From contig JBNJNM010000011.1 in NCBI GenBank assembly GCA_052426225.1, positions 4,712,001 to 4,776,000 of the forward strand: a DNA stretch of 64,000 nucleotides. The letters are read 5' to 3'. Position numbers and translations under genes: made by a program. This stretch comes from Zancudomyces culisetae HAW-14-8 (taxonomy: Eukaryota > Fungi > Kickxellomycota). This document shows positions 25,501 to 63,854 of this stretch, in pieces; position 1 is the stretch's first letter; every line of letters starts with the position of its first letter. The notes under the pieces were generated by a model that did not search any database, had not been told where the DNA came from, and saw only the letters and a list, made by a program, of their open reading frames with translations.

Positions 25501-25556
25501 CTGGAACCGCTCTAGTTTCGGATATAACGTTTTACTGCCAGCCTGTTAATTGCTGA
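19536..25556 (+). CDS. secreted mucin-like Glu/Thr-repeat protein with two homologous terminal 4-Cys domains
   Basis: 2006-aa ORF: signal-peptide-like N-terminus, about 170-aa globular domain, about 1640 aa of EETTT/EVTTT/EEVTT repeats, about 155-aa C-terminal domain; no C-terminal hydrophobic GPI/TM tail. Confidence 0.9.
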   Translation: MKFRISPVLAYMLYSVLSTPMFVAQDTNPICQTSIDSITIPEVAESSGAVTYDWGNSIEVRCQGQEYTVIFEVEAFADVNFVISTTQSIFNDGEVVEGLFGLSSGVWSIGSASYVSEDSFIQVISATTQLILRVDSNTIGIGYNDGNPLKGVINTDEYLTSDFLDAQRFYFAFGTANQEVKITSVQYTCNDPEMCEASTTSTEESTTEETTTEETTTEETTTEETTTEETTTEETTTEETTTEETTTEETTTEETTTEETTTEETTTEEVTTEETTTEVTTTEETTTEETTTEETTTEETTTEETTTEETTTEETTTEETTTEVTTTEETTTEETTTEETTTEETTTEETTTEETTTEETTTEETTTEETTTEETTTEETTTEETTTEETTTEETTTEETTTEETTTEETTTEETTTEETTTEETTTEETTTEETTTEETTTEETTTEETTTEVTTTEETTTEETTTEETTTEETTTEETTTEETTTEETTTEETTTEETTTEETTTEEVTTEETTTEETTTEETTTEVTTTEETTTEETTTEETTTEETTTEETTTEETTTEETTTEETTTEETTTEETTTEVTTTEETTTEETTTEETTTEETTTEETTTEETTTEETTTEETTTEETTTEETTTEETTTEEVTTEETTTEETTTEETTTEVTTTEETTTEETTTEETTTEETTTEETTTEETTTEETTTEETTTEETTTEVTTTEETTTEETTTEETTTEETTTEETTTEETTTEETTTEETTTEETTTEETTTEETTTEETTTEETTTEVTTTEETTTEETTTEETTTEETTTEETTTEVTTTEETTTEETTTEETTTEETTTEETTTEETTTEETTTEETTTEETTTEETTTEETTTEETTTEETTTEETTTEETTTEETTTEETTTEETTTEETTTEETTTEETTTEETTTEETTTEETTTEETTTEETTTEETTTEETTTEETTTEETTTEETTTEETTTEETTTEETTTEETTTEETTTEETTTEETTTEETTTEETTTEETTTEETTTEETTTEETTTEETTTEETTTEETTTEETTTEETTTEETTTEETTTEETTTEETTTEETTTEETTTEETTTEETTTEETTTEETTTEETTTEETTTEETTTEETTTEVTTTEETTTEETTTEETTTEETTTEETTTEETTTEETTTEETTTEETTTEETTTEETTTEETTTEETTTEETTTEETTTEETTTEETTTEETTTEVTTTEETTTEETTTEEVTTEETTTEETTTEETTTEETTTEETTTEETTTEETTTEETTTEETTTEETTTEETTTEETTTEETTTEETTTEETTTEETTTEETTTEETTTEETTTEETTTEETTTEETTTEETTTEVTTTEETTTEETTTEETTTEETTTEETTTEETTTEETTTEETTTEETTTEETTTEETTTEETTTEETTTEETTTEETTTEETTTEETTTEETTTEVTTTEETTTEETTTEEVTTEETTTEETTTEETTTEETTTEETTTEETTTEETTTEETTTEETTTEETTTEETTTEETTTEETTTEETTTEETTTEETTTEETTTEETTTEETTTEETTTEETTTEETTTEETTTEETTTEETTTEETTTEETTTEETTTEETTTEETTTEETTTEETTTEETTTEETTTEETTTEETTTEETTTEETTTEVTTTEETTTEETTTEETTTEETTTEETTTEETTTEETTTEETTTEETTTEETTTEETTTEVTTTEETTTEETTTEETTTEETTTEETTTEVTTTEETTTEETTTEETTTEETTTEETTTEETTTEETTTEETTTEETTTEETTTEETTTEETTTEEVTTEETTTEETTTEVTTTEETTTSTSSTCDSVFTYPAISADSSAKNKNYDFSKEILVPCDTQDFELTATVSSTSDLFIAYMDNLGYYSPNGVVEAQFGLYSGIYSVKKTKYIFVKRSHLITRDTPQSVKVTYHNSVMQTYVDGNLRSRFTVLKFNISKMAVASFTGTALVSDITFYCQPVNC
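20142..25075 (+). repeat. coding 15-bp minisatellite (GAR GAR ACH ACH ACW), about 329 units, with higher-order duplications
   Basis: Continuous 15-nt periodicity; identical blocks at 360-bp spacing (22081 vs 22441) and 690-bp spacing (22921 vs 23611). Confidence 0.97.
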
Positions 25557-46602: not shown

Positions 46603-49600
46603 ATGGTCAAGATAAAGGGAATGAAAGGGCGGCTGAAGAGGTTTTTTGATAAAGACAATGGAGATCGAGTAAGAACAAAGATGGCGTCACTGCCATCGAG
46701 AAAAGTGTATCTAAACTTGATAGTGCCTGATGGAGAACGAGAGTTGCATAAAGATCGATACTGTACAAATGAGGTGTTTACAGCGCAATATACACTATTT
46801 TCCTTTCTTCCGAAAAATCTTTATCAGCAATTTAAAAGAGCGGCAAATCTGTACTTTTTAGTACTTACTACTATACAACTAGTTCCAAAATTTGCGATAG
46901 GGCCACCAGCCTTGGCGGTACTGCCACTTGCAAGTGTACTGATACTGACGGCATTTAAGGATGCGCTGGAGGATTGGCGGCGACATGTAAGTGACCGGAA
47001 AACAAACAGTGCAAAGGCACGGATAGTGAGGAACTGGAAGAATGAGAATATATTTGAAGACGAGGCAGATCGTCGTCGAAACGGACTGATGTCAAGGGTA
47101 TTTATGCGGAAAAAGATGTCCATGCCAAGGTTTTGGATGGATAATAAGTACAACGAGATTAAAGGACGAGAGCCAGAGGTGGTGGAATCCACATGGAAAG
47201 ATATAAGAGTGGGTGATATAGTTGTGCTAAAAAATGGAGATCAAGTGGCAGCGGATATGTTGATACTTTCAACAGCACATGAAGATGACAGTTGCTATGC
47301 GGACAGTAAGGATTTGGACGGCGAAACTAATCTAAAAGCGCGATATTCGCTGAAAGAGTTTCGTAAATATAAAGGCGCAGATGGAGCAGCGCGATTAAGG
47401 GCAGTGGTTGAAACTGATCCACCAACAGAAAACATGTACTCAGCTAATTGTGCAATAACAGTATTTCCAGAGCATGGGGGAGAGCCAAAGGTGGTGTCAG
47501 CAGGGTTGACGAACTTACTGCTGCGAGGGATGGTGCTGCGCAACACAGAGTGGGTGGTGGGGTTAGTTTTGTATACAGGGAGGCAGACAAAAGTAATTTT
47601 AAATTCAGGCTCGCCACCATTTAAGCGTAGCAAGCTGGAGCGGATGATGAACAAAATGGTGATAGTGAATTTTATTACATTGATGGTTTTACTGATTACA
47701 GGGTCAACAATATCAGTGGTACTATTTAATACGTGGTTAACAGGAGATATAAGAGATTTGATCGTTGGGAACACAGAATCAGCCATGTCATACTTTTTTT
47801 CAACAGTGCTAGCAACGTTAGTTTTGCTTCAAAACATTATTCCGATATCACTTTATATAAGTATAGAAGTAATTAGAATAGTACACGCATATTTCATCTA
47901 TAATGACGTAAATATGTACAATGCCGAGCGAGATGAACGATGCGTGCCTAGAAATTGGAGTATTTCCGATGATATGGGCCAAATTGAATATATATTCAGC
48001 GACAAAACAGGTACCCTTACACGAAACCAGATGGATTTTCGAATGTGCTCAATCAATGGAGTTATGTATGGAAAACAGTTGCCAGGCGATGAATTGGATG
48101 TGGTAAAGGGTATGAAGGCACAAGAGTTACTTGAAGAGTTGAATGCGCTAGAAACGGAGGGGGATTTGGAGTATGGAGGTGATGATATTGGAGGTATTGG
48201 GGGTATTGGAGGTATTGGAGGAGGAAACAGTAGCGGTGGCGGTATTGGTGGTGGAGGTGGAGGTAGTAGGTTTAATAGAACAATGGGTAAAGATGAGGAC
48301 AATAGCGAACATATAGGAATGCAGTCAATGGATGGTAAACAATCCAAAGCTGATGATAAAGATATAGAGTACGAACGAAAACTGCAGATTGAAAAATATG
48401 TAAATGAAATGAAAAAAGTATTTGACCCAAGATACGTCAATTTGGACGATGATAATAGTGGAAACTATTCGTTTGTGGATGAAAGAATATTTCGAGACAT
48501 GCTAGCAGCAAACCTAATAGAAGATAGTAAATACAATCAATGGGCAAGCAAGAACGAGCAAGCAAAACAAATCGATATGTTTTTGATGTGTATGTCACTA
48601 TGTCATACAGTTCAAGTAGAAGCAGATATAAACAAATTAACAGCAGATGATAATGATGAAAGTGAACATGTGGTAATAGATGAAGAAAAACAGGAGGGTA
48701 AATTAGGATCATCGATCGGAAAAAGATGGCCATTTAATAGTAGAACACACAGCAGAAACACAAGCCAGAACCCTAGTTTAATATCAATGGGAAAGAAAAC
48801 ACACAATAGAAACAAAACTGTCAGTAGTGGAGTTTTGAATTTGCTTTCAGGACAGGGTGATTCGATTACACAGCCTACATCGGTTCGTAGTTCATCAATA
48901 GCTAGTGAAAGAAGTTCTAATGATATTAAGTACTCAGCTGAATCACCAGATGAAGCAGCGCTAGTGATTGCAGCACGCAACTTGGGACATACATTTGTTA
49001 GTCGGATTCGAGACAAAGTGATGTTAGATATGCGTGGATCAAGCCATGAGTTTACAGTATTAGCAACATTGGAGTTTAATTCAACACGCAAACGGATGTC
49101 AACAGTGATACGACGACCAGCACCATGGAACGATATAGTGATATTTACAAAGGGGGCGGATTCAATAGTGTTGGATTTGCTTAGACCAGTTGATGAGCAT
49201 GAATCAAATGAAAGAATGCGAAGAAATCAAACAAGTAAACAAATAGATGCATTTGCAAATGCTGGACTAAGAACATTAGTATTGGCATATAGAAAAGTTG
49301 ATGAACAAGAGTTTGAAAAATGGATAAAGAAATATGAAGCAGCAAAAGCGAGTATGGGAGAAGATCGAGAACAACAAATAGAAGAGACACAAGCAATGAT
49401 TGAGCATAGCTTGGAGTTGATAGGAGCAACAGCAATTGAAGACAAGCTACAGGAACAAGTACCTGAATGTATTGCAGCATTAAGATCAGCGTCTATCAAG
49501 ATATGGGTGTTGACAGGAGACAAGATGGAGACAGCAATTAATATAGGATTTGCGGCAAATCTGTTGGCACGAGATATGGAGTTGTGGAAGTTGGATGGGC

Positions 49601-51270
49601 GGGGTAAGACACGGGAGTCGATACTGGCAAAGTTTTGGTTGATTAGTAAGATGGTTAGGGAGTCGAACAGAGGAAATGTGCAGTTTACGCTACCAGAGGA
49701 GGTTACCGGCATGACGCGACACTCACTGAGTATTATGATAGATGGAGAAGAAGGGGATACGGAGATCCATGGACAGCGGAGAGTGCCGCTGGATCTTAAG
49801 GAGGCAGATATCCTAACAAAGATATCGCACCGGGTAGGTAAGGCAGTAAACAACTTCAAGCTGGAGCGAACCGGTCCAGCAGCTAGGCCAAGTTTACTTG
49901 ATTTAGGTGATTCCCTATCGGTTCTCAACGAACCAATCCAATCAGCCGACGTCGACACTAACAAAATTATCCGCAAAAATATCAAGAATGCCAAAAAGGC
50001 CAGAAAGAAGAATCTACGACTAAATTCCGAATCTTTTATGGAATCACCAACAGCCCCTTCTTTCTTCCGGTCGCCATCCGTTCCTCTAGCTGCTATTTCT
50101 GATTCTCATCACAAACCCACCCGCTATTCCCGCTCTCTCTTTGCTGAAAATACATCAATTAAGGATCCTCCCTCTCAGTTTCCCAATGCTCTTGCTCTCG
50201 ACGGCTCGGCTCTCGATGTTATTTTGAAAGACCAATATGCCGCTGAAGAGCTTGTACAGTTGGCTCCGATCTTTCGTTCCGTTATTTGCTGCCGTGCCTC
50301 TCCACTGCAAAAGTCCCAGGTCGTCAGCCTGATCCGCAAAGGTCTCAGCACCCTAACTCTGGCCATTGGTGATGGTGCAAATGATGTCAGTATGATTCAG
50401 GCTGCAAATGTGGGTGTTGGTATAAGTGGCGTTGAGGGAATGCAAGCTGCCAACTCTTCAGACTATAAAATTGCTCGCTTCCATTACCTTCAAAACCTGT
50501 TGTTAGTTCATGGTCTCTTCAACTACCTACGTTTTAGCGAAGCAGTTATGTACTTCTTTTATAAAAATATCATTTGGGCTCTTGCTCCCTTCTGGTATGG
50601 CTCTAGTTGTCTCTTCTCTGGCAACCTTCTCTTTTCCTTCATCTACATCCAAACCTACAACCTCGTTTTCACCCTTTTTCCCGTCTTCTTTCTTGGAACC
50701 ATCGACAAACCATTCAACTACAAAACCGCTATGCTTTACACTGGAACATACCGTCTCGGAATCCGCAACGCCTATTTCTCTTACCGTCGCTTTGCCATGT
50801 ATGCCCTCGACGGTTTCTACCAAGCCGCCGCCATCTTCCTCGTATTTTTCCTCTTTACCCTTTCCTATCCCGTACTTTCTTCTGGCAAAATGTGGTCTAT
50901 CGCCAACTTTTCCACTGGAATTGTTGTCACTATTATCATCTGCACCCTTATCACCGCCTTTATTGACTCGTATCAGTCAAACTATTTCATGATCTTTGTG
51001 GCCATCTTCTCAGTTGCCAGCTATTTTGCTATTGGTCCACTTGGTGCTGCTCTGAACCTTGACCCTACTCTTGAACAGCCTTTTAGTTTCTACCAAGAAG
51101 TTTATGCCTCACCTGTGTTTTGGCTCTCTGTTTTCATGGCCACTCTTCTTGCTGTTCTTCCTCGCTTCTTGTTTACCTATTACTCTCGTGCCTTAAGGCC
51201 CAAGGATATTGATGTTGTTCGTGAAATCAAAATTCTTAAGCGACCATGGTATGGCCAGGTCAGCACTTAA
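46603..51270 (+). CDS. P4-ATPase phospholipid flippase, Dnf1/Dnf2-like (copy 1)
   Basis: 1555 aa; DLDGETNLK, QNIIPISLY, Dnf1/2-type CVPRNWSISDDMGQIEYIFSDKTGTLT, ESPDEAAL, EFNSTRKRMS, WVLTGDKMETA, GDGANDVSMIQ. Confidence 0.95.
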   Translation: MVKIKGMKGRLKRFFDKDNGDRVRTKMASLPSRKVYLNLIVPDGERELHKDRYCTNEVFTAQYTLFSFLPKNLYQQFKRAANLYFLVLTTIQLVPKFAIGPPALAVLPLASVLILTAFKDALEDWRRHVSDRKTNSAKARIVRNWKNENIFEDEADRRRNGLMSRVFMRKKMSMPRFWMDNKYNEIKGREPEVVESTWKDIRVGDIVVLKNGDQVAADMLILSTAHEDDSCYADSKDLDGETNLKARYSLKEFRKYKGADGAARLRAVVETDPPTENMYSANCAITVFPEHGGEPKVVSAGLTNLLLRGMVLRNTEWVVGLVLYTGRQTKVILNSGSPPFKRSKLERMMNKMVIVNFITLMVLLITGSTISVVLFNTWLTGDIRDLIVGNTESAMSYFFSTVLATLVLLQNIIPISLYISIEVIRIVHAYFIYNDVNMYNAERDERCVPRNWSISDDMGQIEYIFSDKTGTLTRNQMDFRMCSINGVMYGKQLPGDELDVVKGMKAQELLEELNALETEGDLEYGGDDIGGIGGIGGIGGGNSSGGGIGGGGGGSRFNRTMGKDEDNSEHIGMQSMDGKQSKADDKDIEYERKLQIEKYVNEMKKVFDPRYVNLDDDNSGNYSFVDERIFRDMLAANLIEDSKYNQWASKNEQAKQIDMFLMCMSLCHTVQVEADINKLTADDNDESEHVVIDEEKQEGKLGSSIGKRWPFNSRTHSRNTSQNPSLISMGKKTHNRNKTVSSGVLNLLSGQGDSITQPTSVRSSSIASERSSNDIKYSAESPDEAALVIAARNLGHTFVSRIRDKVMLDMRGSSHEFTVLATLEFNSTRKRMSTVIRRPAPWNDIVIFTKGADSIVLDLLRPVDEHESNERMRRNQTSKQIDAFANAGLRTLVLAYRKVDEQEFEKWIKKYEAAKASMGEDREQQIEETQAMIEHSLELIGATAIEDKLQEQVPECIAALRSASIKIWVLTGDKMETAINIGFAANLLARDMELWKLDGRGKTRESILAKFWLISKMVRESNRGNVQFTLPEEVTGMTRHSLSIMIDGEEGDTEIHGQRRVPLDLKEADILTKISHRVGKAVNNFKLERTGPAARPSLLDLGDSLSVLNEPIQSADVDTNKIIRKNIKNAKKARKKNLRLNSESFMESPTAPSFFRSPSVPLAAISDSHHKPTRYSRSLFAENTSIKDPPSQFPNALALDGSALDVILKDQYAAEELVQLAPIFRSVICCRASPLQKSQVVSLIRKGLSTLTLAIGDGANDVSMIQAANVGVGISGVEGMQAANSSDYKIARFHYLQNLLLVHGLFNYLRFSEAVMYFFYKNIIWALAPFWYGSSCLFSGNLLFSFIYIQTYNLVFTLFPVFFLGTIDKPFNYKTAMLYTGTYRLGIRNAYFSYRRFAMYALDGFYQAAAIFLVFFLFTLSYPVLSSGKMWSIANFSTGIVVTIIICTLITAFIDSYQSNYFMIFVAIFSVASYFAIGPLGAALNLDPTLEQPFSFYQEVYASPVFWLSVFMATLLAVLPRFLFTYYSRALRPKDIDVVREIKILKRPWYGQVST
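47896..49679 (+). repeat. left arm of a 1,784-bp inverted repeat (partner 60763..62546)
   Basis: Line-by-line reverse-complement comparison: identical except 48637/61805 (L/V), 49095/61347 (synonymous) and 49560/60882 (synonymous); paired coordinates sum to 110442. Confidence 0.97.
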
Positions 51271-51367
51271 CTTATTTATGTTCACCCTCTTTTTTTGTCA
51301 GTTAATTTATTTATTCACTCATCTATTAAAATTCTAGACTAAGTTTAATAAAATTACATTTTTCCTT

Positions 51368-53101
51368 TCACTTGATATAACCAAGGCGCCATTTCCATAC
51401 AGAAAAGTATACCGAAACCGCGACCGTCAGCGCCGCCAAAGTAGTTTTGGAGGCAAGATTGAAAAGCAATCTTCCACCGTTATATCCGCCAAAAGTCACT
51501 AACTGTCGCAACCGTACTGGCCATCCACGCAAGATGCGGTCGGAAATTCCACAAGCAGCCAAGCGCTGGGTGGCAAGGAGTGAAGGTAAGTCGGTATTGG
51601 ACACAAACTGGGCCTCAATGTATAGGAGTTTATGATCCGAGAATGCAAGGTCGGTGTTGTACATGGCAGAATGGGTGATATCGAGGTGTCGTACAAATGT
51701 CCAGTCGACTTTTGCACGCATTAGAGTGCCGTGGCTACTGATTGTGTGGTCTGATGATGGGTTGAACGGTTCAAACCAGTCCAACGTAATACTCTCATCT
51801 ACCTCAAGACTAGTATTGGTATTGGTATTGGTATTGGTATTGGTATTGGTATTGGTATTGGTATTAGCATTAGCATTAGCATTAGCATTAGCATTAGCAT
51901 TAGCATTAGCATTGGTGTTGGTGTTGGTGTTGGTAATACTTGGTGGTTTTGTAACTGTTGAAGTTTCCATGTATGTGTTTGTAATTGTGGGTATATTTTG
52001 CTTTTGAAATTGGCTTTGTTTTGGCTGCTCAAACAACCAGGCATATGCTCTACGTACGCGTGCCACCCACCCACCGCCAACTCCACCACCAACTCCACTT
52101 CCACTTCCACTTCCACTTCCACTTCCACCAACGTCAACACCATTCACACCAACGCCATTCCGTACAACACTCAAGCCTAACTTCTCTTTACCATAAGACC
52201 GTGGATACTCCTCCAGATACCTCTCCAAGATGGAACGTACCCGCCACGAAGGGCCAAATGCATGTCTTAATACATATACATACCACCATTCAGCTTCCGC
52301 AAAACATACAGACCGGTACCGGAACGCATCGGTGCAATGAACTGGTGATACACGCGCAAGTGCATGTCCAAATGTATTGAAGTACCCGCAAATCAGCTGG
52401 CGAGAGTACCCACGGGCAACCCACTGTGTACTGGCTGTAACTACATCGTGTAGTTGACCGAGACGACCAAGAAGCCCTGCAAAACACTCAAAATGTACGT
52501 TAAAAACGACAAGGTTTCCACTATCACCACCATTGTCGCTGTTGTTTGATTGGCATGATATATAGGTAGGGATACGGAGTGCGGCAGCTAGTATGTACCG
52601 CGTACCAACACGCGGTTCATGAAGATGAATACCATCCGAATCCCAGTTATATGGTTGGTGTACATGAGCCGTACACTCCACATTTACAAAATCAAACTTG
52701 GTCAAAATGGCGTTTCCGTGGACACCACCACCTTGTTGTATTTGTGATCGTAGTGGCGAGGAAAGTTCCTGAAACTCGGTCACAAACGCCCCATTCATTT
52801 GCAACGCTGCTGTCAGTGCTGCAAATTGGTCAATACCACCTGACCTCGCATTATGGATGTCCAGTTCTTGGAGACATAAGATGTCGGCGTCCAGTTTGAG
52901 TAGTTGGTCCACGATTGCAGAGAAGTGGTACCCGCGTTCAATATTAAACGATACGCATTTGAGCGGTCTTGATCCTACTTTTTTTTTTTTTTCTTTTTTA
53001 AAAGAGTCTTTTTCTAGTTGCGTTTTTTCACGACAATCAAGAAATACCACAGTTCCTGGTATATACTTGTTGTAGGTTGTGTTTGTTATTTCTACGTCCA
53101 T
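51368..53101 (-). CDS. endonuclease/exonuclease/phosphatase (EEP) family protein with C-terminal hydrophobic anchor; one catalytic Asp appears as Tyr
   Basis: SFNIERG, DADILCLQELD, HGNAILTK, NVHFE, G[Y]FNT, KVDWTF, SDH motifs. First ATG at 53101 (MDVEIT); tail TTLAALTVAVSVYFSVWKWR. Confidence 0.85.
   Translation of the reverse strand: MDVEITNTTYNKYIPGTVVFLDCREKTQLEKDSFKKEKKKKVGSRPLKCVSFNIERGYHFSAIVDQLLKLDADILCLQELDIHNARSGGIDQFAALTAALQMNGAFVTEFQELSSPLRSQIQQGGGVHGNAILTKFDFVNVECTAHVHQPYNWDSDGIHLHEPRVGTRYILAAALRIPTYISCQSNNSDNGGDSGNLVVFNVHFECFAGLLGRLGQLHDVVTASTQWVARGYSRQLICGYFNTFGHALARVSPVHCTDAFRYRSVCFAEAEWWYVYVLRHAFGPSWRVRSILERYLEEYPRSYGKEKLGLSVVRNGVGVNGVDVGGSGSGSGSGSGVGGGVGGGWVARVRRAYAWLFEQPKQSQFQKQNIPTITNTYMETSTVTKPPSITNTNTNTNANANANANANANANANTNTNTNTNTNTNTNTNTSLEVDESITLDWFEPFNPSSDHTISSHGTLMRAKVDWTFVRHLDITHSAMYNTDLAFSDHKLLYIEAQFVSNTDLPSLLATQRLAACGISDRILRGWPVRLRQLVTFGGYNGGRLLFNLASKTTLAALTVAVSVYFSVWKWRLGYIK
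51812..51934. repeat. compound coding hexamer microsatellite (ATTGGT)n(ATTAGC)n(GTTGGT)n encoding NT/NA repeats
   Basis: Directly visible inside the EEP ORF; a (CCACTT)n Gly-Ser run also lies at about 52094-52128. Confidence 0.9.
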
Positions 53102-53489
53102 TATCCTCTTATATATTTTCAAACCCTTTTGTTTCTATGGACTCTGGTTAAAGTGAGCCTAAAAAATTCGACTAGAAAAAAGAAGAAAAAAATATAAAAA
53201 AAAGGAGATAACACGAATTGGTTGGGTGCTACCAAGTAAAAAAAGTATACCTGTTGAATGATATGATCTATGAGCTTTCCCTCCCTCTCTCCGTGTTTTT
53301 TGGGTCGTTTTAGAATCGTCAAAATATACCTTTATCTGAAAGTGATTTTCAGCCTGAATTGCCTCTTCGTGTTGTGTTTTGTGTCTTGTCTTGTTTCGCG
53401 GTATTATTTTTTTTGTTCTTATTTTTAGTATTTTTTTACTTTACAATTCCAAACTATCAATTTTTGTTTTATCGTTTCTCCCCAGCACT

Positions 53490-53540
53490 CTCTTGCTCTT
53501 ACTCTTGCTCTTACTCTTGCTCTTACTCTTTCTCTTACAC
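53490..53540. repeat. imperfect (TCTTGC/TCTTAC)n pyrimidine-rich repeat
   Basis: tcttgctcttactcttgctcttactcttgctcttactct in the intergenic region upstream of the EEP gene. Confidence 0.75.
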
Positions 53541-54445
53541 TTTCTCTTTCTCGCTTTCACTTATGGCCTGTCACTGTTATAGTATTAGTTATTTATCTGT
53601 TTACTTGTTATTTTTTACTAAGGTTTACTGTTACATCATGCTTTTCATGTGGTTTAGAATCTAAACTTTACTCATTATCTCTCTCCCCCCCTCCTCCACT
53701 TAAAAAACAAGAAAAAATGCATAAAAAATTACACCCACGTGAATATTTATCCAATAAAGAATTTTCTTTGCTTCATCATCCCTTCTCATGTTTTTCCTAG
53801 TCCAATCCAAACATTGTACCCATGTATTTGCACATATACATTTTATTTTTTTTGGTTTTTTTTCTCCATAATGATGGAAATTGGATAGGTGGATTTAACT
53901 GAACCCGAGTTTTAAATGATTCTGGTTGGCTTTTGCAAGAAAATGCTTTTAGCCTAGATCACATTGCCTTTTGTACTATTTACTCAGGTAGCTTGCCTCC
54001 ACCACTTCCCCTCTCTCATATCTCCATTTTTCCTTTTTGTTCATATCATTATGTTCCTCAAACACATACGTATAATGAAACTGGTAAACAAAGTGGATCT
54101 GCTATGCTTTTTATCGTTCTAAAATCAGTATTCAAATTTGCAGTGCACAAATATCTGATGAATGAATCAGTCATATAATATCAACTATCTAATTTAATTT
54201 ATCGATCAGCAGTTGTTTTTTTTTTTGCCTTTTTCGAATCAATATCAATATAGTATCAATAAAATAAAAATGGAAAATAAAAACTGCCAAATAGGAAAAA
54301 CGCTCAGCATTTACCATTTATTTTTACTTCTGGTATATCACTTTCCTGTCAATATAAAAGATCGATTTACAGTTTGTATATCTCGGTACTTCGAATTTAC
54401 TGAATCCAGACAGATTTTACTCGATCGTTTTGTTACCTACCAAAA

Positions 54446-55192
54446 ATGAATTATTCAAAAAATATGTCCAAGATCTTGGCATTCAATTCTGCCAAATTAC
54501 TTTTGATGTCAAAGGCCGCTTATTCAAGTAAGTCTTTTTTCTGCTTACATATTACTTTTCATTATAAAGAACTCTTACTCTCTTCTGTTTAAACTGGAGA
54601 AGCAAGAGAAATGTTCACCGGTTGTTACAAGTAAATTTGCAATTCATACTATTGCATACACATTCTCTAAATATTTTTTTTAAGAAAAGTAAAATGCTAA
54701 ATAAATAAATGAATATATATAGACTCCGCACAATCCACAACCAAATGCTTATTCGAAGCGCTGCGTTCCGATCTGCTTACATCTATGCGCGCCAAGGATA
54801 CCGAAAAATCCACCGTAATACGCGCTCTACTCTCTGACATCACTTACCACGAAAAGGATAAATCCACCAAGAACTTTGCCAAAACAAACGACAGTTGTGT
54901 CATTCCGATACTTCAGCGGGCCCAGCAGAAACGATTCGAAGCAGCTGAAATCTTTGAGCGCGGAAACCGCGCAGAGTTGGCTGCTGCTGAGCGTGCACAG
55001 GCCGCCATCATTGCTGCGTACCTGCCAACCCCGCTCTCAGATCCTGAGATAGAGACCCGCATTGACGCTGCTGTTGCAAAATGCGGTGGTTCTGTGAAGA
55101 ACCTTGGGGATATCATTAAGAACATTGATATCGACTTTGTAGCTACCCCTAAAAACAAGGTGTTGGAGCTGGCCAGAAAAAGGCTTTCATAA
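54446..55192 (+). CDS. AIM41: YqeY/Aim41-family protein, probably mitochondrial; exons 54446-54527 and 54723-55192
   Basis: LFEALRSDLLTSMRAKD...VIRALLS.I...KR.EAAEIF.RG.RAELAAAER...IAAYLP is a YqeY pattern. A GTAAGT...TAG intron (54528-54722) joins in frame to an acid-free, Lys/Ser-rich presequence-like exon (MNYSKNMSKILAFNSAKLLLMSKAAYS). Confidence 0.8.
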
Positions 55193-55890
55193 ATTATATA
55201 CTTAACCTTTCATATACATTTATATATGGTGTTGTCACTAATGGTATTGGTAGAGTTTTTATTTTTTTTTTAACTTGTGATTTATCTGTCAAATATATGT
55301 TTGTATACATTCCTAGTATTAGGAACTATAGACGGTGAGAAAAAGTAATATTTCTTTGTCTTTTACTATGAGCTTTTTATCTGCCGAGAAAACCTCTCTC
55401 ATTAGTGTGGTGGTGGTGGTGGTGGTGATAGTTTTAGGTATAGTTTAATGACTGAGAAGAAGAAAAGTAACAAAGCCTACATTACAATTAACTAATTCAT
55501 CGATTATATAATTTTATAACCAAATTGATAAGCTAGCATTTAGTGTATTTCGAACATTGTCAATAGAAATATTATGCATATTTTGTTAAACAGAGCATGG
55601 AATTCATATCTAGAATAATCCGTGTTGTAACCACAATCTACTACAACGAATTATTGTGTTTTTGGAATACTCTATCGACAAACTCTATTAATGCTATGCG
55701 TTGAACAAAATCATATTTACATTCTAAAGCTATTATACAATCTATTTTTCCTTCCACCTTTTAATGCTAGTGCTAAGACAATAATTATAATATTTCTATA
55801 CTTTATGTCTAAAAAAATCATCTTGAAAACATTTTAAACCGTATTCCCTACTTTACAGAAAGAACAGCAATATATTACTGACTGTAGACC

Positions 55891-56326
55891 ATGAACTCAA
55901 AATATTACCCAGAGAAGACAGTACAAGTACTCACAAGTTTTGTGGCATACCTTAGCCTGTAAGTACACCGACAGACTAAATCGCCTTACTTTGATATGTA
56001 TATGTATATTATACACTTGTATCCAGTAGAAAAGTTCGCTCTATATTCAAACTAAACTCAATTATAGTAAACATCGTCCAGATGCAGAAGTGCTAATATA
56101 TGATGCAGCAAATACAAAGTTGATACACTTCAAAGTTATGAAAAACTGTACAATCCACGAACTATTTTTCGAATGTTACCCTCACGCACCAAAAGAAATT
56201 ATATTTAGAAATATAGTTACTGGACAGGTAATAAACCCGACCCATGCCCTGCTTACACAGTTGGTGTTGAAAGAAAATGAGTCAGAGCCTGAGAGGCTTA
56301 TATTACAGGCGACTTTACCTAGTTAG
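55891..56326 (+). CDS. small two-exon orphan (108 aa), possible ubiquitin/SUMO-like fold; exons 55891-55958 and 56068-56326
   Basis: A GTAAGT...CTAAAC...TAG intron joins phase 2 in frame: MNSKYYPEKTVQVLTSFVAYLSLKHRPDAEVLIYDAANTKLIHFKVMKNCTIHELF...IIFRNIVTGQVINPTHALLTQLVLKENESEPERLILQATLPS. Confidence 0.55.
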
Positions 56327-56638
56327 ACATTTTATAGTTTTATATCCTGCTTGTCTTTGTTTAGTCATCTTTTATCTCACGCTATACAAGCGGACTTTGT
56401 ACGCCTAAAAATGCAAAATCGCCGCCAATTGAAAATCAGACGATTTACACTTCCCTAGCCACATGAATAAATTTCAACTGGATTGGAATTATTTCCGTCT
56501 TTTTCGTTTCCTATTTACTTTTGCATATAACTAATGCTAAATTGTTTCAGTTATTCCCTGTTTTTTTTTAACTTTGCGGTTAAAAAAAGAGAAGATAAGA
56601 AAAGAAATAGGATTACCCAAGATATATAGTGCAACACG

Positions 56639-57135
56639 ATGGTTTCGACTCTAACAGCTGTACAACGAACAAATATACTAGCTCCTTTACTACAAAAGGG
56701 CTGGAAAATGGTTGAAAACCGAGATGCGATATCCAAAATCTTTATTTTTAGTGGCTTTAATGAGGCATTTGGATTCATGTCTAGAGTAGCACTCAAGGCA
56801 GAAAAAATGGATCACCATCCAGAGTGGTTTAATGTAAGTTTTATCTGATTATAACATCTACTCTCGTGCATTATATCCAACACAATTATATTTTATTTTT
56901 TTCTCCATCAAACATTGAGCATTTAGACATCGTGCGCAAAGTGAGATTCTAATTACCTCAAAAAGTAGTGTTCATTTCTTTATAACTCATAAACTAACTC
57001 CATAACGCACATCACTTTAACCCGTAGGTTTACAATAGAGTTGAAATCACCCTTTCAACACACGACTGTCAAGGATTGTCCCAACGCGACGTGGACCTCG
57101 CATCTTTTATTGAAGAAATCAATTTAGCCGAATAA
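56639..57135 (+). CDS. pterin-4-alpha-carbinolamine dehydratase (100 aa); exons 56639-56833 and 57028-57135
   Basis: [38 protein letters not shown]|[29 protein letters not shown]; canonical GTAAGT...CTAAC...TAG intron. Confidence 0.94.
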
Positions 57136-57479
57136 CATGGTATTTTGTATCTCTACCTTCTACTTTAATGGCAGAAGATGTGGTTTTACTCACATGATTA
57201 GTCTGTATTGCGAAGGTTTTTTTTTTTACTTTTTGAACTAGTGTGCAATATATGAAATAAATGCTTTCAAATTGTATCATAGTTTACCCTTGAATTTTAT
57301 GCAAGAATATACATATATATAAAAGTATTCAAAACGACCAGAAAATAAACCAAATTATAGTATTAATTCCCATTGAGCTATATGTCCTGTCCATACTTAG
57401 CTTTAAAAGCTTTGTACTTATACGACTTCGAGGTGACACGAACACGACTTAAACTACAAAGTATCCACAAGGGAGGGTT

Positions 57480-58329
57480 TTATCTTAAAGAGCGTTGGAA
57501 TCTATCCCTAGCCTGTTTGTAGGCCTCAAAAAGCGATTGTTCATTGAGTGAAGATAAATTCATGTCTATGTTATCGCCTCCTCTCCTTGAAACACGTGAG
57601 ACTATGATTGAAGGAACAGTTTCCAGTACGATTCTATTGTATGGATTTCATTTATTACGTCCTCTGTTCAACAGGCCTTCCTCAATTATGAATGAATAGA
57701 AAATTTTAGAAACAAAGAATAGATAAATATCATACCCGTCATCGATCGTCTCATCTAGTGCTAGCAATGTCAAGTCCAATCCGTCTAATATGGATCTTTT
57801 ATCCACATTTTGTCTATTATGGTTACATTTTTTTCTATTTTATATCTGCTCGTTCAATATGGATGAATACATTATAAAACGAAAATTACCTTAGCAATAT
57901 TTGAAGGGCTTCCACAAATGCATTCAATGCTGTTGAAAGTAGTAATTCGTTCTCATCAGCTCTACCGACCAGACAAAATGTTATGTCTGAAACTGCTTTA
58001 AACAGGATGATGTTTCCCTCAAAAAACATGATTTCATCAGCTTGGTAAGACAAAAAAAATTATAAAAGCATTATTTAGATTAGTCATTACATTCTTCCAA
58101 AAAAAAAGAGCATACACATGTATTCTTGTACAGAAAGGATATTTAAAATGTTACCACTGCTTTTTCCTATTTTTTCCCCTAGCCTACCCTCAAATGCCTT
58201 TTGATCCTTAACATTCTGATACTTATTACCATCGGCCGGATTTCTGTTATAATATTTAGCGATGATTCTTTTTCCATCGCTATCGAAAATTATCATTGAG
58301 ACTACCGAGTATAGAGTTAAATTCGACAT
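57480..58329 (-). CDS. RET3: coatomer subunit zeta (185 aa); exons 58329-58155, 58040-57890, 57813-57736, 57633-57480
   Basis: Spliced: MSNLTLYSVVSMIIFDSDGKRIIAKYY...KDQKAFE..L..K...DENELLL...RQNVDKRSILDGLDLTLLALDETIDDGIVLET...RVS...QARDRFQRSLR*; three GT-AG introns keep the frame. Confidence 0.93.
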
Positions 58330-58845
58330 TTTTACAAACTGTTACGAGTTTTTAGCTTTGAAAAAAAATAAAACGTAAATAAAGCAAAAGCGACACTAAA
58401 TAATCACAGCCCTTAAATCTCTTGGTATCCCATTGGCCCATGTCCCTATTAAACATTGGGCTTTGAATTTTTGTTGTTTCTCAACATTGTGTTGGCTTTT
58501 AATTGAGCAAACTTGGGCAAAAAATAAATTAAATTAAAAAATTACAAGTTTTTAATAAACACATAATACACTTAAACATATAAATGTTTACCCATCGTAA
58601 TGTTATATTGGAAGATCCCTTCTTTGTCTATTTCCCATTACGAGGTGGTAGTGGAGATGCTCTTAGAGATTCTTCTGAAGATAATTTATCAAATTATCTG
58701 TGCAAAAAAAAGCATTAGGCACAAAAAAAAAGCTGAGCCAGTTGTTTCACAGCACGCAAAACAGCTATGGATTTAGACCACCTTATATGTCTTCAATAAG
58801 CTTAGTTTTTAGTCTTAGCACCCAGATGAACATTGAAAAAGTCAA

Positions 58846-58884
58846 AAGCCATAATAGCCATAATAGCCATAATAGCCATAATAA
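58846..58884. repeat. (AGCCATAAT)4 tandem repeat
   Basis: Visible 9-bp repeat downstream of flippase copy 2. Confidence 0.85.
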
Positions 58885-59030
58885 TATTTATTAACAACTG
58901 TAGGTGTAGTATATTATGATATATTTCTAAAACAAACAAACCCTCAACAACTCAAGCTTACATTGATTATATATTCTTTTATCAACAACAATAAATTAAA
59001 AAGTAAGAAAAAAGGTGCTAATTTTTCCTG

Positions 59031-62000
59031 TCAAGGGTCATCAACATAAACCTGACCATACCAAGGTTTCCTCATAACCTTAATTTCACGAACAATATCC
59101 ACGTCCTTTGGTTTGATGTGTTTTTGGTAGTATTTCAGTAGGAAGTGTGGTGTGACTGCGAGCAAAACAGCAAGTACACACGAAAGCCATGTCACCGGAG
59201 TAAGAAAAACTTCAAAGAAGGTACTATCACCGAGGTGGGTGGAAAACAATCCGTTTACATACGTAAGCGTAAAAAATGCAGAGAATGAGATGAACAACAT
59301 TGCATATAGCACCCAGTTCCACTGATAGGCGTCTATACACGCAGTAAAGTTTACACACAGTATGATCGAGAACACGATACCTGTGGAAAAACTGTCGTGA
59401 TCCCACACCTTGCCGTTTTGATTGACAACAGGAGCTGAAAGCTGTGTTGTCAGGTAAAAAACAAAGAAAATGGCTGCAGATTGATAAATGCCACTAAGGA
59501 CATATGTAAATAGTTTTTTATCGCTGAAGTACTTGTTTTTGATTCCCAAACGATATAACCCAGTGTACGTCATAACTGTCTTATAGTTCAGTGGTTTATC
59601 TATTGCTCCTAAGAAGAAAACCAACAACACCGCTAGGATCATATTGTATGTTTGCAGATATATGTAGTTGTACAAAACATTCCCGCTGAACTGAGAAAAT
59701 ATCGCATACCAGAGAGGACAAATCGCCCATATGATGTTTTTGTAAAAAAAATACAGAATTGCCTCGCTGAATCGGATGTAGTTGAAAAGCCCGTGTACCA
59801 ACAACAAATTTTGCAAATAGTGGAATCTTGTAATCAGGTAATCTGACGCATTTGCTGCCTGCATTCCCTCAACACCTCGTATACCCACACCTATATTTGC
59901 TGCCTGAATCATACTGACGTCATTTGCTCCGTCCCCAATAGCAAGTGTTATTGTATCCATACCCTTTTTGATCAGAGTTACAACTTGTGCTTTTTGAAGT
60001 GGTGATACTCTACAACAAAGCACAGAGCGTAGGCTTGGTGCCAATCTTACCAACTCGGCCGATGCTTCCTCATCTTTGAGAATAACATCCAGTGACAACC
60101 CATCAAGCACTAGGGCGTTTGGTGAGTTAATATGATCAAAAACCTGTGGAGTTTTTTGACTCCATTTATTTTCAAACGGAATTATCCTAGTTATGTTCTT
60201 CAACCAGTTCGACTCGCTAAACCCTACATTGGAAAATAACGTCCTCTTTGGCGCAAAAATATACTTGTTGTATTTTGATCTCAGCCTATCAATCAATTGA
60301 TTTGCCCTGCTTTTTTTCTTTGAAATATCCAAAAAACTTCTGAGGTATGATCTTTCGCTAACTTTATGTTGTTTGGGGTCTGCTAGGAAGGTATAATTCT
60401 CAGTTGGATCAAAGACTGTATTTGAAATGCTAACACTTCGTCCATCTTCATATTCACCCGCAAAGCTTAAGGTTCTTTCCAATCTACTTAGGCGATAAGA
60501 AATATCAGGTAGTACCCTGGCCTCAATGTCATTAATACTAATTATGTTTGCTACACAAAGCTCAGAACTGTTTTGAGTGTTAAGTGGCCTCTCAAAAATA
60601 AGATTTCGATGCAGTCTGCCAGTCACGGGTGCAAAGGGCTGATCTGTAGTTAAAGGAGGTATGCTATACTGGGAGTACGTTTTTTTTGAATCCTTAGAGC
60701 ATCCACTATTTTGACGATTGTCATTTTCTTGTAAATTTATTGAGTCGTGGATATCGAAAAATACATTTCCTCTGTTCGACTCCCTAACCATCTTACTAAT
60801 CAACCAAAACTTTGCCAGTATCGACTCCCGTGTCTTACCCCGCCCATCCAACTTCCACAACTCCATATCTCGTGCCAACAGGTTTGCCGCAAATCCTATA
60901 TTAATTGCTGTCTCCATCTTGTCTCCTGTCAACACCCATATCTTGATAGACGCTGATCTTAATGCTGCAATACATTCAGGTACTTGTTCCTGTAGCTTGT
61001 CTTCAATTGCTGTTGCTCCTATCAACTCCAAGCTATGCTCAATCATTGCTTGTGTCTCTTCTATTTGTTGTTCTCGATCTTCTCCCATACTCGCTTTTGC
61101 TGCTTCATATTTCTTTATCCATTTTTCAAACTCTTGTTCATCAACTTTTCTATATGCCAATACTAATGTTCTTAGTCCAGCATTTGCAAATGCATCTATT
61201 TGTTTACTTGTTTGATTTCTTCGCATTCTTTCATTTGATTCATGCTCATCAACTGGTCTAAGCAAATCCAACACTATTGAATCCGCCCCCTTTGTAAATA
61301 TCACTATATCGTTCCATGGTGCTGGTCGTCGTATCACTGTTGACATTCGTTTGCGTGTTGAATTAAACTCCAATGTTGCTAATACTGTAAACTCATGGCT
61401 TGATCCACGCATATCTAACATCACTTTGTCTCGAATCCGACTAACAAATGTATGTCCCAAGTTGCGTGCTGCAATCACTAGCGCTGCTTCATCTGGTGAT
61501 TCAGCTGAGTACTTAATATCATTAGAACTTCTTTCACTAGCTATTGATGAACTACGAACCGATGTAGGCTGTGTAATCGAATCACCCTGTCCTGAAAGCA
61601 AATTCAAAACTCCACTACTGACAGTTTTGTTTCTATTGTGTGTTTTCTTTCCCATTGATATTAAACTAGGGTTCTGGCTTGTGTTTCTGCTGTGTGTTCT
61701 ACTATTAAATGGCCATCTTTTTCCGATCGATGATCCTAATTTACCCTCCTGTTTTTCTTCATCTATTACCACATGTTCACTTTCATCATTATCATCTGCT
61801 GTTACTTTGTTTATATCTGCTTCTACTTGAACTGTATGACATAGTGACATACACATCAAAAACATATCGATTTGTTTTGCTTGCTCGTTCTTGCTTGCCC
61901 ATTGATTGTATTTACTATCTTCTATTAGGTTTGCTGCTAGCATGTCTCGAAATATTCTTTCATCCACAAACGAATAGTTTCCACTATTATCATCGTCCAA

Positions 62001-63854
62001 ATTGACGTATCTTGGGTCAAATACTTTTTTCATTTCATTTACATATTTTTCAATCTGCAGTTTTCGTTCGTACTCTATATCTTTATCATCAGCTTTGGAT
62101 TGTTTACCATCCATTGACTGCATTCCTATATGTTCGCTATTGTCCTCATCTTTACCCATTGTTCTATTAAACCTACTACCTCCACCTCCACCACCAATAC
62201 CGCCACCGCTACTGTTTCCTCCTCCAATACCTCCAATACCCCCAATACCTCCAATATCATCACCTCCATACTCCAAATCCCCCTCCGTTTCTAGCGCATT
62301 CAACTCTTCAAGTAACTCTTGTGCCTTCATACCCTTTACCACATCCAATTCATCGCCTGGCAACTGTTTTCCATACATAACTCCATTGATTGAGCACATT
62401 CGAAAATCCATCTGGTTTCGTGTAAGGGTACCTGTTTTGTCGCTGAATATATATTCAATTTGGCCCATATCATCGGAAATACTCCAATTTCTAGGCACGC
62501 ATCGTTCATCTCGCTCGGCATTGTACATATTTACGTCATTATAGATAAAAAATGCGTGTAAAATCTTGATAAATTCTATGCTCATGTACAGCGATATTGG
62601 TATTATATTTTGAAAAAGCACGAGTGAGGATAAAAAGGAAGAAAGAAAGTATGTGCTTCCTTCCATTAAACCACTCAGATAAAACGCATTTTCACCTCCA
62701 GAAGCGCTCCAGCTAAAGATTACTTGTGAAGATATGGCGTTTAAAAGACAGAGCGATATCAAGAAAAAAAAGTTTACGATCACATGTTTATTCATGCTCT
62801 TCTCTAGTCTGCTGCGCTTAAATACAGGAGGACCCGTGTTTAGGACCACCTTTGTCTGTCTTCCAGTGTAAATTACCAATCCTATCGTCCACTCTGTATT
62901 TCTTAGAACCATTCCTCTCAATAGCATGTTGTTCATGTTATAACCAACAGTTTTTGTTCTACCTTTCTCGAGAATTTTGATCTTACCATTTGCATCTTGT
63001 AGATCTGCTGTTGGGCTATCAGCTTCCGCTACCAATCGAAGTTGAACTACACCTTCAATTCCTTTGTATTCCTTAAATATATCTAGAGAGCTGCGAGATT
63101 TTAGGTTTGTTTCTCCATCCAAATCCTTTGTGTCAACAAAACAAGCGCCGTTATCATGTGCTGATGACAATATCAAGATATCTGCTGGTATCTGGTTATT
63201 TTCGGTAATGTAAATTAAATCACCCACTCGGACGTCTTTCCATTTGAAATTTCTTACTATTGGACTCCCCCCAGTAGTTTGGTTATGTATATCACTGAGC
63301 CATGTTTTTGATATGGAATTATTGTTGCTGTCAGCGTATGAGTCAAATATCGAGCCGAATATTGAACTTTGTTTTGTACATGTATTTAAAGGATCGTCTA
63401 TTATATTTTTATTGACAACGTTTTTTATCACCTTTGTTTTTATATTGTTTAGCCTATTGTCGCTGATATGTCTTCTCCAATCTTCCACTGCATCCTTGAA
63501 CGCAGTTAGTGCCAACACTGAGAGTAAGGGTAACACTGCTGCCCAAGCCGGTCCAATCTTAAAATATGGAATTAGCTGTACTATTGCCATCATTAGAAAG
63601 TATACATTTGCAAACCGCTTAAACTGCCTAAATATATTTTTAGGCAGAAAAGTAAGTAGTGTATACTGAGATGTTATTACTTCATTCGAGACATAATGGC
63701 TCATATGCGATTCTCTCTCTTCTTTTGGAACATCTACATTTAAGTACACCTTCCTTGGAGGCAACTGACTCATCTTATCCCGCGTTCTATCTCCATTGTT
63801 TTTTTTGAAAAACTTTATATACCGTGACTTTGTGTATTGTATTACTTCCTCCAT
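59031..63854 (-). CDS. P4-ATPase phospholipid flippase, Dnf1/Dnf2-like (copy 2)
   Basis: Same motif set as copy 1 (DLDGETNLK, FQNIIPISLY, DKTGTLT, GDGANDVSMIQ). First ATG (MEEVIQ) is at 63854; the ORF-track start at 63878 is TTG. Confidence 0.95.
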   Translation of the reverse strand: MEEVIQYTKSRYIKFFKKNNGDRTRDKMSQLPPRKVYLNVDVPKEERESHMSHYVSNEVITSQYTLLTFLPKNIFRQFKRFANVYFLMMAIVQLIPYFKIGPAWAAVLPLLSVLALTAFKDAVEDWRRHISDNRLNNIKTKVIKNVVNKNIIDDPLNTCTKQSSIFGSIFDSYADSNNNSISKTWLSDIHNQTTGGSPIVRNFKWKDVRVGDLIYITENNQIPADILILSSAHDNGACFVDTKDLDGETNLKSRSSLDIFKEYKGIEGVVQLRLVAEADSPTADLQDANGKIKILEKGRTKTVGYNMNNMLLRGMVLRNTEWTIGLVIYTGRQTKVVLNTGPPVFKRSRLEKSMNKHVIVNFFFLISLCLLNAISSQVIFSWSASGGENAFYLSGLMEGSTYFLSSFLSSLVLFQNIIPISLYMSIEFIKILHAFFIYNDVNMYNAERDERCVPRNWSISDDMGQIEYIFSDKTGTLTRNQMDFRMCSINGVMYGKQLPGDELDVVKGMKAQELLEELNALETEGDLEYGGDDIGGIGGIGGIGGGNSSGGGIGGGGGGSRFNRTMGKDEDNSEHIGMQSMDGKQSKADDKDIEYERKLQIEKYVNEMKKVFDPRYVNLDDDNSGNYSFVDERIFRDMLAANLIEDSKYNQWASKNEQAKQIDMFLMCMSLCHTVQVEADINKVTADDNDESEHVVIDEEKQEGKLGSSIGKRWPFNSRTHSRNTSQNPSLISMGKKTHNRNKTVSSGVLNLLSGQGDSITQPTSVRSSSIASERSSNDIKYSAESPDEAALVIAARNLGHTFVSRIRDKVMLDMRGSSHEFTVLATLEFNSTRKRMSTVIRRPAPWNDIVIFTKGADSIVLDLLRPVDEHESNERMRRNQTSKQIDAFANAGLRTLVLAYRKVDEQEFEKWIKKYEAAKASMGEDREQQIEETQAMIEHSLELIGATAIEDKLQEQVPECIAALRSASIKIWVLTGDKMETAINIGFAANLLARDMELWKLDGRGKTRESILAKFWLISKMVRESNRGNVFFDIHDSINLQENDNRQNSGCSKDSKKTYSQYSIPPLTTDQPFAPVTGRLHRNLIFERPLNTQNSSELCVANIISINDIEARVLPDISYRLSRLERTLSFAGEYEDGRSVSISNTVFDPTENYTFLADPKQHKVSERSYLRSFLDISKKKSRANQLIDRLRSKYNKYIFAPKRTLFSNVGFSESNWLKNITRIIPFENKWSQKTPQVFDHINSPNALVLDGLSLDVILKDEEASAELVRLAPSLRSVLCCRVSPLQKAQVVTLIKKGMDTITLAIGDGANDVSMIQAANIGVGIRGVEGMQAANASDYLITRFHYLQNLLLVHGLFNYIRFSEAILYFFYKNIIWAICPLWYAIFSQFSGNVLYNYIYLQTYNMILAVLLVFFLGAIDKPLNYKTVMTYTGLYRLGIKNKYFSDKKLFTYVLSGIYQSAAIFFVFYLTTQLSAPVVNQNGKVWDHDSFSTGIVFSIILCVNFTACIDAYQWNWVLYAMLFISFSAFFTLTYVNGLFSTHLGDSTFFEVFLTPVTWLSCVLAVLLAVTPHFLLKYYQKHIKPKDVDIVREIKVMRKPWYGQVYVDDP
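60763..62546 (-). repeat. right arm of the 1,784-bp inverted repeat (partner 47896..49679)
   Basis: Reverse complement of 47896..49679 with 3 mismatches; mirrored spurious ORFs in the track (47898..48440 vs 62002..62544 etc.) confirm the register. Confidence 0.97.

What the first reader, a model, noticed from the sequence alone, without database searches (positions are those of the whole stretch)
46603..63854. Candidate flip-flop inversion system that would swap the C-terminal halves of two P4-ATPase flippases
Seen: two convergent Dnf1/2-like flippase genes are heavily diverged in their N- and C-terminal parts. They share an in-frame 1,784-bp inverted repeat (47896-49679 / 60763-62546; 3 mismatches) with abrupt edges. 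It starts just after TM4 (IYNDV...) and covers the DKTGT phosphorylation site and the N-domain, ending at ...RESNRGNV before TM5. The arms enclose 11,083 bp (49680-60762) holding both 3' gene halves plus five intact small genes. Established: crossover between inverted repeats inverts the enclosed DNA, as in flip/flop mating-type switching of methylotrophic yeasts via kb-scale IRs. In P4-ATPases the lipid pathway is built mainly from TM1-4 plus TM6, while the C-terminal helices and tail contact Cdc50/Lem3 and carry regulation. Inference: a single crossover would convert N1-core-C1 + N2-core-C2 into N1-core-C2 + N2-core-C1 with both frames intact and no gene loss. That gives four flippases from two loci, and each promoter plus TM1-4 would get a different TM5-10 half. 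No recombinase gene is visible, so homologous recombination would be the presumed mechanism.
Basis: partly seen in the sequence, partly recalled or inferred. Interest (0 to 1): 0.9.

Follow-up and report, generated by a model that had tools for sequence, protein, structure and literature searches.

The report
Paired flippase genes sharing recombined cores
Two old, facing copies of a lipid-flippase gene in a mosquito-gut fungus keep their catalytic middles almost identical by ongoing DNA exchange, a known kind of gene conversion seen at two more pump-gene pairs in this genome; a switch that swaps their halves is possible but not shown.

Summary
The 1,784-bp in-frame inverted repeat is real (3 mismatches). 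The genome is Zancudomyces culisetae HAW-14-8 (HiFi assembly). Flippases A and B are lineage-specific sister paralogs: synonymous sites are saturated outside the repeat (pS about 0.8) and 0.008 inside. An independent Illumina assembly of strain COL-18-3 has the same repeat and edge. There, one site is changed in both arms and another is swapped between arms, so exchange is ongoing, not a one-off event or an artefact. Two other linked, inverted P-type ATPase pairs (Dnf3-like; Na/K-like) show the same homogenised N/P-domain tract, while an unlinked third Dnf copy does not; the scan had noted both pairs before. Best reading: recurrent gene conversion between linked inverted paralogs, stopped by variable inserts and probably by selection on membrane helices. 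A crossover would give in-frame chimeras, as at human CTRB1/CTRB2, but no flipped allele is shown. One COL-18-3 contig joins the Dnf3-like pair in flipped form, but 500-bp inserts cannot phase it. No silenced site, shared cis element or tyrosine recombinase was found.

The parts
46603..51270 (+). Flippase A, intronless Dnf1/2-like P4-ATPase, 1,555 aa
   Evidence: ORF and Pfam PhoLip_ATPase_N/C; best hits in Harpellales
59031..63854 (-). Flippase B, 1,607 aa, sister paralog of A; TM6 lacks the FTxxP motif kept in all other homologs aligned
47896..49679 (+). Repeat arm 1: homogenised tract from the end of TM4 through DKTGT, the N domain with its low-complexity inserts, and TGDK
   Evidence: pS 0.008, pN 0.001
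60763..62546 (-). Repeat arm 2 in gene B
49680..60762 (.). Spacer of 11,083 bp that a crossover would invert; collinear in strain COL-18-3
51368..53101 (-). EEP (exo/endonuclease/phosphatase) family gene, 577 aa
   Evidence: PF03372; called in COL-18-3 too
54785..55192 (+). Aim41/YqeY-like gene (possibly with an upstream exon)
   Evidence: PF09424; 99% match to a Z. culisetae protein
56030..56326 (+). Orphan small gene (main exon, approximate limits), with a homolog next to YqeY in Furculomyces
   Evidence: tblastn E 8e-10
56639..57120 (+). Pterin-4a-carbinolamine dehydratase, spliced (approximate end)
   Evidence: PF01329; tblastn
57651..58329 (-). Zeta-COP-like adaptor small chain, spliced (approximate end); ancestral 3' neighbour of this flippase

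Best explanation
A and B arose by an old local inverted duplication in the Zancudomyces lineage. Because they lie 11 kb apart and face each other, the arms can pair and serve as repair templates, so recurrent non-allelic gene conversion keeps the cytoplasmic catalytic core identical while the rest has diverged beyond the reach of recombination. The tract stops where a length-variable insert breaks homology (3' edge) and at the substrate-selecting TM4 (5' edge), where selection probably opposes conversion. Shown: near-identity including silent sites, age of the flanks, exchange between arms across two strains, recurrence at two more linked pairs, absence in an unlinked paralog. Inferred: the repair mechanism, the cause of the edges, and that crossovers are rare or removed by selection. 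There is no regulated switch.
For: pS 0.008 inside against 0.79 and 0.83 outside. The tract includes inserts only 24-39% identical to other homologs, so protein constraint cannot explain it. A and B are sisters in N, core and C trees (99-100 support). In COL-18-3, 902 bp of each arm differ at 3 sites, less than strain divergence in adjacent coding DNA (15/3,323); site 49263 is C in both COL arms and T in both HAW arms (chance about 0.006), and 49560 is swapped. The Dnf3-like pair on C8 shares 990 bp at 99% ending at the same structural point. The Na/K-like pair on C21 has two homogenised tracts split by diverged TM3-4. Unlinked paralog C is saturated throughout (pS 0.77-0.83), as are unlinked paralog pairs in Smittium (about 50% identity in the core).
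Against: Conversion and crossover come from the same intermediate, so these data cannot exclude flips. The swap at 49560 and the flipped Dnf3-like contig L013 are what a flip would also give. The COL-18-3 arms come from a short-read assembly in which collapsed consensus could imitate the shared change at 49263. Selection at the TM4 edge was not tested.
Confidence: 0.7

Rival explanations
1. The same recombination sometimes resolves as a crossover, so both orientations segregate among strains or haplotypes and give hybrid flippases (unprogrammed, as at human CTRB1/CTRB2 or K. phaffii centromeric repeats). This adds to the best explanation rather than replacing it.
For: Recombinants stay in frame. 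About 2-kb repeats in K. phaffii show orientation polymorphism in natural isolates (10.1101/056382). COL-18-3 has two contigs that share N(E)+core and continue into C(D) or C(E), differing at a few allele-like sites. Site 49560 is reciprocally swapped. In D/E the rate asymmetry is in the N half only.
Against: The COL-18-3 library had 500-bp inserts (PMC5026252) and the D/E core has 621 bp without a distinguishing site, so an assembler branch explains both contigs. No second copy of the A/B locus appears in the HiFi assembly. D keeps the ancestral formin-Dnf3-formin order. B has an altered TM6, and a Dnf1/Drs2 TM5 exchange gave an inactive protein (as cited in PMC5732287), so hybrids may be selected against.
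Confidence: 0.21
2. A regulated flip/flop system that yields four flippases from two loci in response to life stage or gut conditions.
For: Repeat size and spacing resemble yeast flip/flop loci (2-kb repeats, 8-44 kb spacers; PMC6692504). Three P-type ATPase pairs share the layout.
Against: No silenced or expressed position is evident; the locus is about 460 kb from the contig end. No DNA word of 16 bp or more is shared among the three tracts. No tyrosine recombinase in the genome (PF00589). The arms keep private differences in both strains, whereas the inducible K. phaffii repeat is described as identical. The split tracts of the Na/K-like pair fit conversion opposed by selection, not a designed crossover zone. 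Unchecked scan notes list conversion tracts in tandem thiolases and ankyrin genes too.
Confidence: 0.04
3. A single recent conversion event copied 1.8 kb from one gene into the other.
For: Very low divergence and an abrupt 3' edge.
Against: A change shared by both arms in one strain and a swapped site need exchange after the strains' alleles split. A one-off event between silent-site-saturated genes is unlikely (established: mismatch repair blocks recombination between diverged sequences), and it would have to have happened at three loci.
Confidence: 0.03
4. Assembly or polishing homogenised two diverged cores.
For: Raw reads could not be checked.
Against: HiFi assembly from a >20-kb library (PMC12611240); arm-specific differences are retained; an independent strain, platform and assembler give the same repeat and 3' edge.
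Confidence: 0.02

Closest known systems
Leptodactylus ATP1A1 R/S paralogs (10.1101/2020.08.04.234435)
   Same: Linked P-type ATPase duplicates homogenised by ongoing gene conversion while function-bearing differences are kept.
   Different: Tandem, and homogenised nearly throughout with 12 maintained substitutions; here the copies are inverted, about half the gene has escaped, and selection is not demonstrated.
Human CTRB1/CTRB2 inversion HsInv0030 (PMC6145291, PMC4576756)
   Same: Oppositely oriented paralogs with an identical internal block; a 16.6-kb inversion makes hybrid genes and transcripts with no dedicated recombinase.
   Different: Genes 97% identical, only promoter and exon 1 exchanged, polymorphism proven; here the exchangeable halves are 50-61% identical and no flipped allele is proven.
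Komagataella phaffii centromeric inverted repeats (10.1101/056382)
   Same: About 2-kb fungal repeats whose uninduced recombination leaves orientation polymorphic among isolates.
   Different: Non-coding and centromeric; no chimeric protein results.
Flip/flop mating-type switching, FF1/FF2 (PMC6692504, PMC5720833)
   Same: Kilobase repeats flanking a multi-gene segment; in Ogataea the repeat is part of a gene (SLA2).
   Different: [quoted passage not shown]

Membership tests
Concerted evolution by non-allelic gene conversion | Tract far more alike than its flanks, silent sites included | tested here: met
   pS 0.008 against 0.79/0.83
Concerted evolution by non-allelic gene conversion | Variants shared between paralogs within a strain but differing between strains | tested here: met
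   Sites 49263 and 49560; three sites in D/E; short-read caveat
Concerted evolution by non-allelic gene conversion | Dependence on linkage | tested here: met
   Three linked pairs homogenised; unlinked C and Smittium pairs not; small sample
Concerted evolution by non-allelic gene conversion | Selection maintaining the diverged parts | not tested
   Only suggested by edge positions and the split tracts of the Na/K-like pair
Flip/flop switching (FF1/FF2) | Kilobase near-identical inverted repeat around a segment | tested here: met
Flip/flop switching (FF1/FF2) | Both orientations occur in clones or strains | tested here: inconclusive
Flip/flop switching (FF1/FF2) | Inversion is inducible by a signal | not testable with these tools
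   Needs cultures
Flip/flop switching (FF1/FF2) | One position silenced by centromere or telomere | tested here: inconclusive
   Gene-dense surroundings on both sides, about 460 kb from the contig end; expression not measured
Flip/flop switching (FF1/FF2) | Segment carries MAT genes | tested here: not met
   Five spacer genes identified, none MAT-like
Site-specific invertase systems (shufflon type) | Linked recombinase and short shared crossover sites | tested here: not met
   No PF00589 match in the genome; no shared 16-mer among tracts; serine recombinases not searched
P4-ATPase, Dnf1/2-like | PhoLip_ATPase_N/C domains, PISL in TM4, DKTGT, DGET, GDGAND | tested here: met

The most novel reading that the evidence does not exclude
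Z. culisetae populations carry both orientations at one or more of its three inverted P-type ATPase pairs, so TM1-4 and TM5-10 halves that are only 50-60% identical are recombined into working hybrid pumps. Regulation of the flip is a smaller sub-case (about 0.04).
Probability: 0.22. Interest if true: 0.72.

Novelty: new member of a known kind. Interest (0 to 1): 0.38.

Why it matters
It is a clean fungal example of domain-limited concerted evolution, repeated three times in one pump superfamily: the ATP-handling core stays shared while the membrane helices diverge. That gives a natural map of which parts of a flippase are interchangeable. If flipped alleles exist, they would be natural half-and-half chimeras of eukaryotic transporters, and the published long reads of this strain can settle that cheaply. 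It also explains broken and chimeric gene models (OMH79818) in the older assembly.

Tried and rejected
Exact look-ups of window proteins found nothing. Synteny cannot orient A/B: the assembled state keeps the ancestral order of zeta-COP and PCD relative to the large Sec7-like gene, the flipped state would keep that of YqeY and the orphan. A PAK kinase beside B is not the ortholog of the one beside the Smittium gene. N versus C trees show no detectable past swap, since A and B are sisters in both. GC3 gives no direction of conversion and no GC bias. The bacterial promoter scan is irrelevant. Two literature searches found no report of this locus type in fungi.

Full report
Observation. Self-comparison confirms arms at 47896-49679 and 60763-62546, 1,784 bp with three mismatches, around 11,083 bp. 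They lie in frame in two convergent intronless P4-ATPase genes, A (46603-51270, +) and B (59031-63854, -). The tract runs from just after TM4 through DKTGT, the N domain and TGDK, and stops where a length-variable insert begins, about 280 residues before TM5. The 3' edge is abrupt; the 5' edge grades through TM4. A crossover would give open frames of 1,602 and 1,560 aa. The genome holds only these two copies.

Organism. Best hits are Harpellales. The window's contig is 5,239,357 bp, exactly the largest contig of the PacBio HiFi assembly of Zancudomyces culisetae HAW-14-8 (PMC12611240), and a spacer protein matches Z. culisetae at 99%. The species is reported as probably diploid (PMC5954228).

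Age and cause of the identity. Outside the tract, synonymous sites are saturated (pS 0.79 and 0.83); inside, pS is 0.008. The tract includes low-complexity inserts that are 24-39% identical to other homologs, so recombination, not protein constraint, keeps it. A and B are sisters in trees of the N part, the core and the C part, so the duplication is old but lineage-specific. A third Dnf1/2-like gene on another contig is saturated against A throughout, and the two paralogs of Smittium species lie in different neighbourhoods and are about 50% identical in the core.

Second strain. A contig of COL-18-3 (Illumina, Ray, 500-bp inserts; PMC5026252) covers the spacer and 902 bp of each arm. The repeat and its 3' edge are the same, which rules out a HiFi artefact. 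Among four arms, five sites vary: 49263 is C in both COL arms and T in both HAW arms; 49560, 120 bp from unique sequence, is swapped between arms; three are private to one arm. The arms differ by 0.17-0.33%, less than the strains differ in adjacent coding DNA (0.45%). I infer exchange on the time scale of allelic variation: fast against mutation, slow against cell generations. Caveat: collapsed short-read consensus could imitate the shared site. The contig ends inside both arms, so it says nothing on orientation.

Recurrence. Two more linked inverted P-type ATPase pairs show the pattern. A divergent Dnf3-like pair (D/E, C8:635754-659222) shares 990 bp at 99%, ending at the same structural point. 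A divergent Na/K-ATPase-like pair (C21:3182494-3218986) has two homogenised tracts (pS 0.10 and 0.04) split by diverged TM3-4 (0.51) and followed by diverged TM5-10 (0.83). I found D/E myself; the scan had noted both pairs (s1-666759, s1-676110), and its note led me to the third. The three tracts share no 16-bp word and the genome has no PF00589 recombinase.

Is there a flip? The only direct hint is at D/E: COL-18-3 has two contigs that share 11,152 bp including N(E) and the core, then continue into C(D) or C(E). They differ at a few allele-like sites, so a heterozygous inversion is possible, but 621 bp of the core have no distinguishing site and 500-bp inserts cannot bridge that; an assembler branch explains it equally. 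D keeps the ancestral formin-Dnf3-formin order. Synteny is neutral for A/B. B has lost the conserved FTxxP of TM6 in both strains, a sign that the C halves are not equivalent; a Dnf1/Drs2 TM5 exchange was inactive (cited in PMC5732287).

Mechanism. Shown: homogenised core, old flanks, exchange between arms, dependence on linkage in a small sample. Inferred: intrachromosomal repair using the facing arm as template; edges set by indel heterology and by selection on substrate-selecting helices; crossovers rare or purged. Confidence 0.70; unprogrammed orientation polymorphism 0.21; regulated switch 0.04; one-off conversion 0.03; artefact 0.02.

Comparison. It works like conversion between Leptodactylus ATP1A1 duplicates and has the layout of human CTRB1/CTRB2, where an inversion between opposed paralogs makes hybrid genes. 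Uninduced flipping at 2-kb repeats is known at K. phaffii centromeres. It is not a member of yeast flip/flop switching, which moves MAT genes between expressed and repressed sites: the segment has no MAT genes, and induction and silencing are not shown.

Verdict. Real feature, new member of a known kind, interest 0.38. The threefold recurrence in one pump superfamily and the ready long-read test keep it above routine. If hybrid pumps segregate (probability about 0.22) it would merit about 0.72.

Noticed in passing
G000:C8:635754-659222 (L001-L003): Divergent Dnf3-like flippase pair D/E with a 990-bp 99% tract; D's N half evolves about twice as fast as E's, the C halves equally.
   Followed up: yes
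G000:C21:3182494-3218986 (L020-L023): Divergent Na/K-ATPase-like pair with two homogenised tracts; TM4 and TM6 ion-site motifs differ (PEGLL/PEGLP; LELIAIDL/LQIIAIDL).
   Followed up: yes
L013, L014 (COL-18-3 contigs LSSK01001401, LSSK01001254): Public protein OMH79818 is an N(E)-core-C(D) chimera: either an assembler branch or a real flipped haplotype.
   Followed up: partly
window, gene B TM6 (about 59550-59600, minus strand): Conserved FTxxP motif replaced in B only, in both strains.
   Followed up: partly
window 51368-53101: EEP-family protein reads GYFN where the family usually has GDFN, and carries long TN/AN and GS repeats.
   Followed up: no
window 19536-25556: 2,006-aa ORF with a 4.9-kb array of 15-bp-multiple tandem repeats.
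   Followed up: no
G000 C6 and C12: Several genes appear as identical-scoring copies on both contigs (1,407-aa and 1,507-aa ATPases, PAK kinases), suggesting retained haplotigs or a large duplication.
   Followed up: no
window 56030-56326: Orphan gene with a homolog beside YqeY in Furculomyces; no Pfam match.
   Followed up: partly
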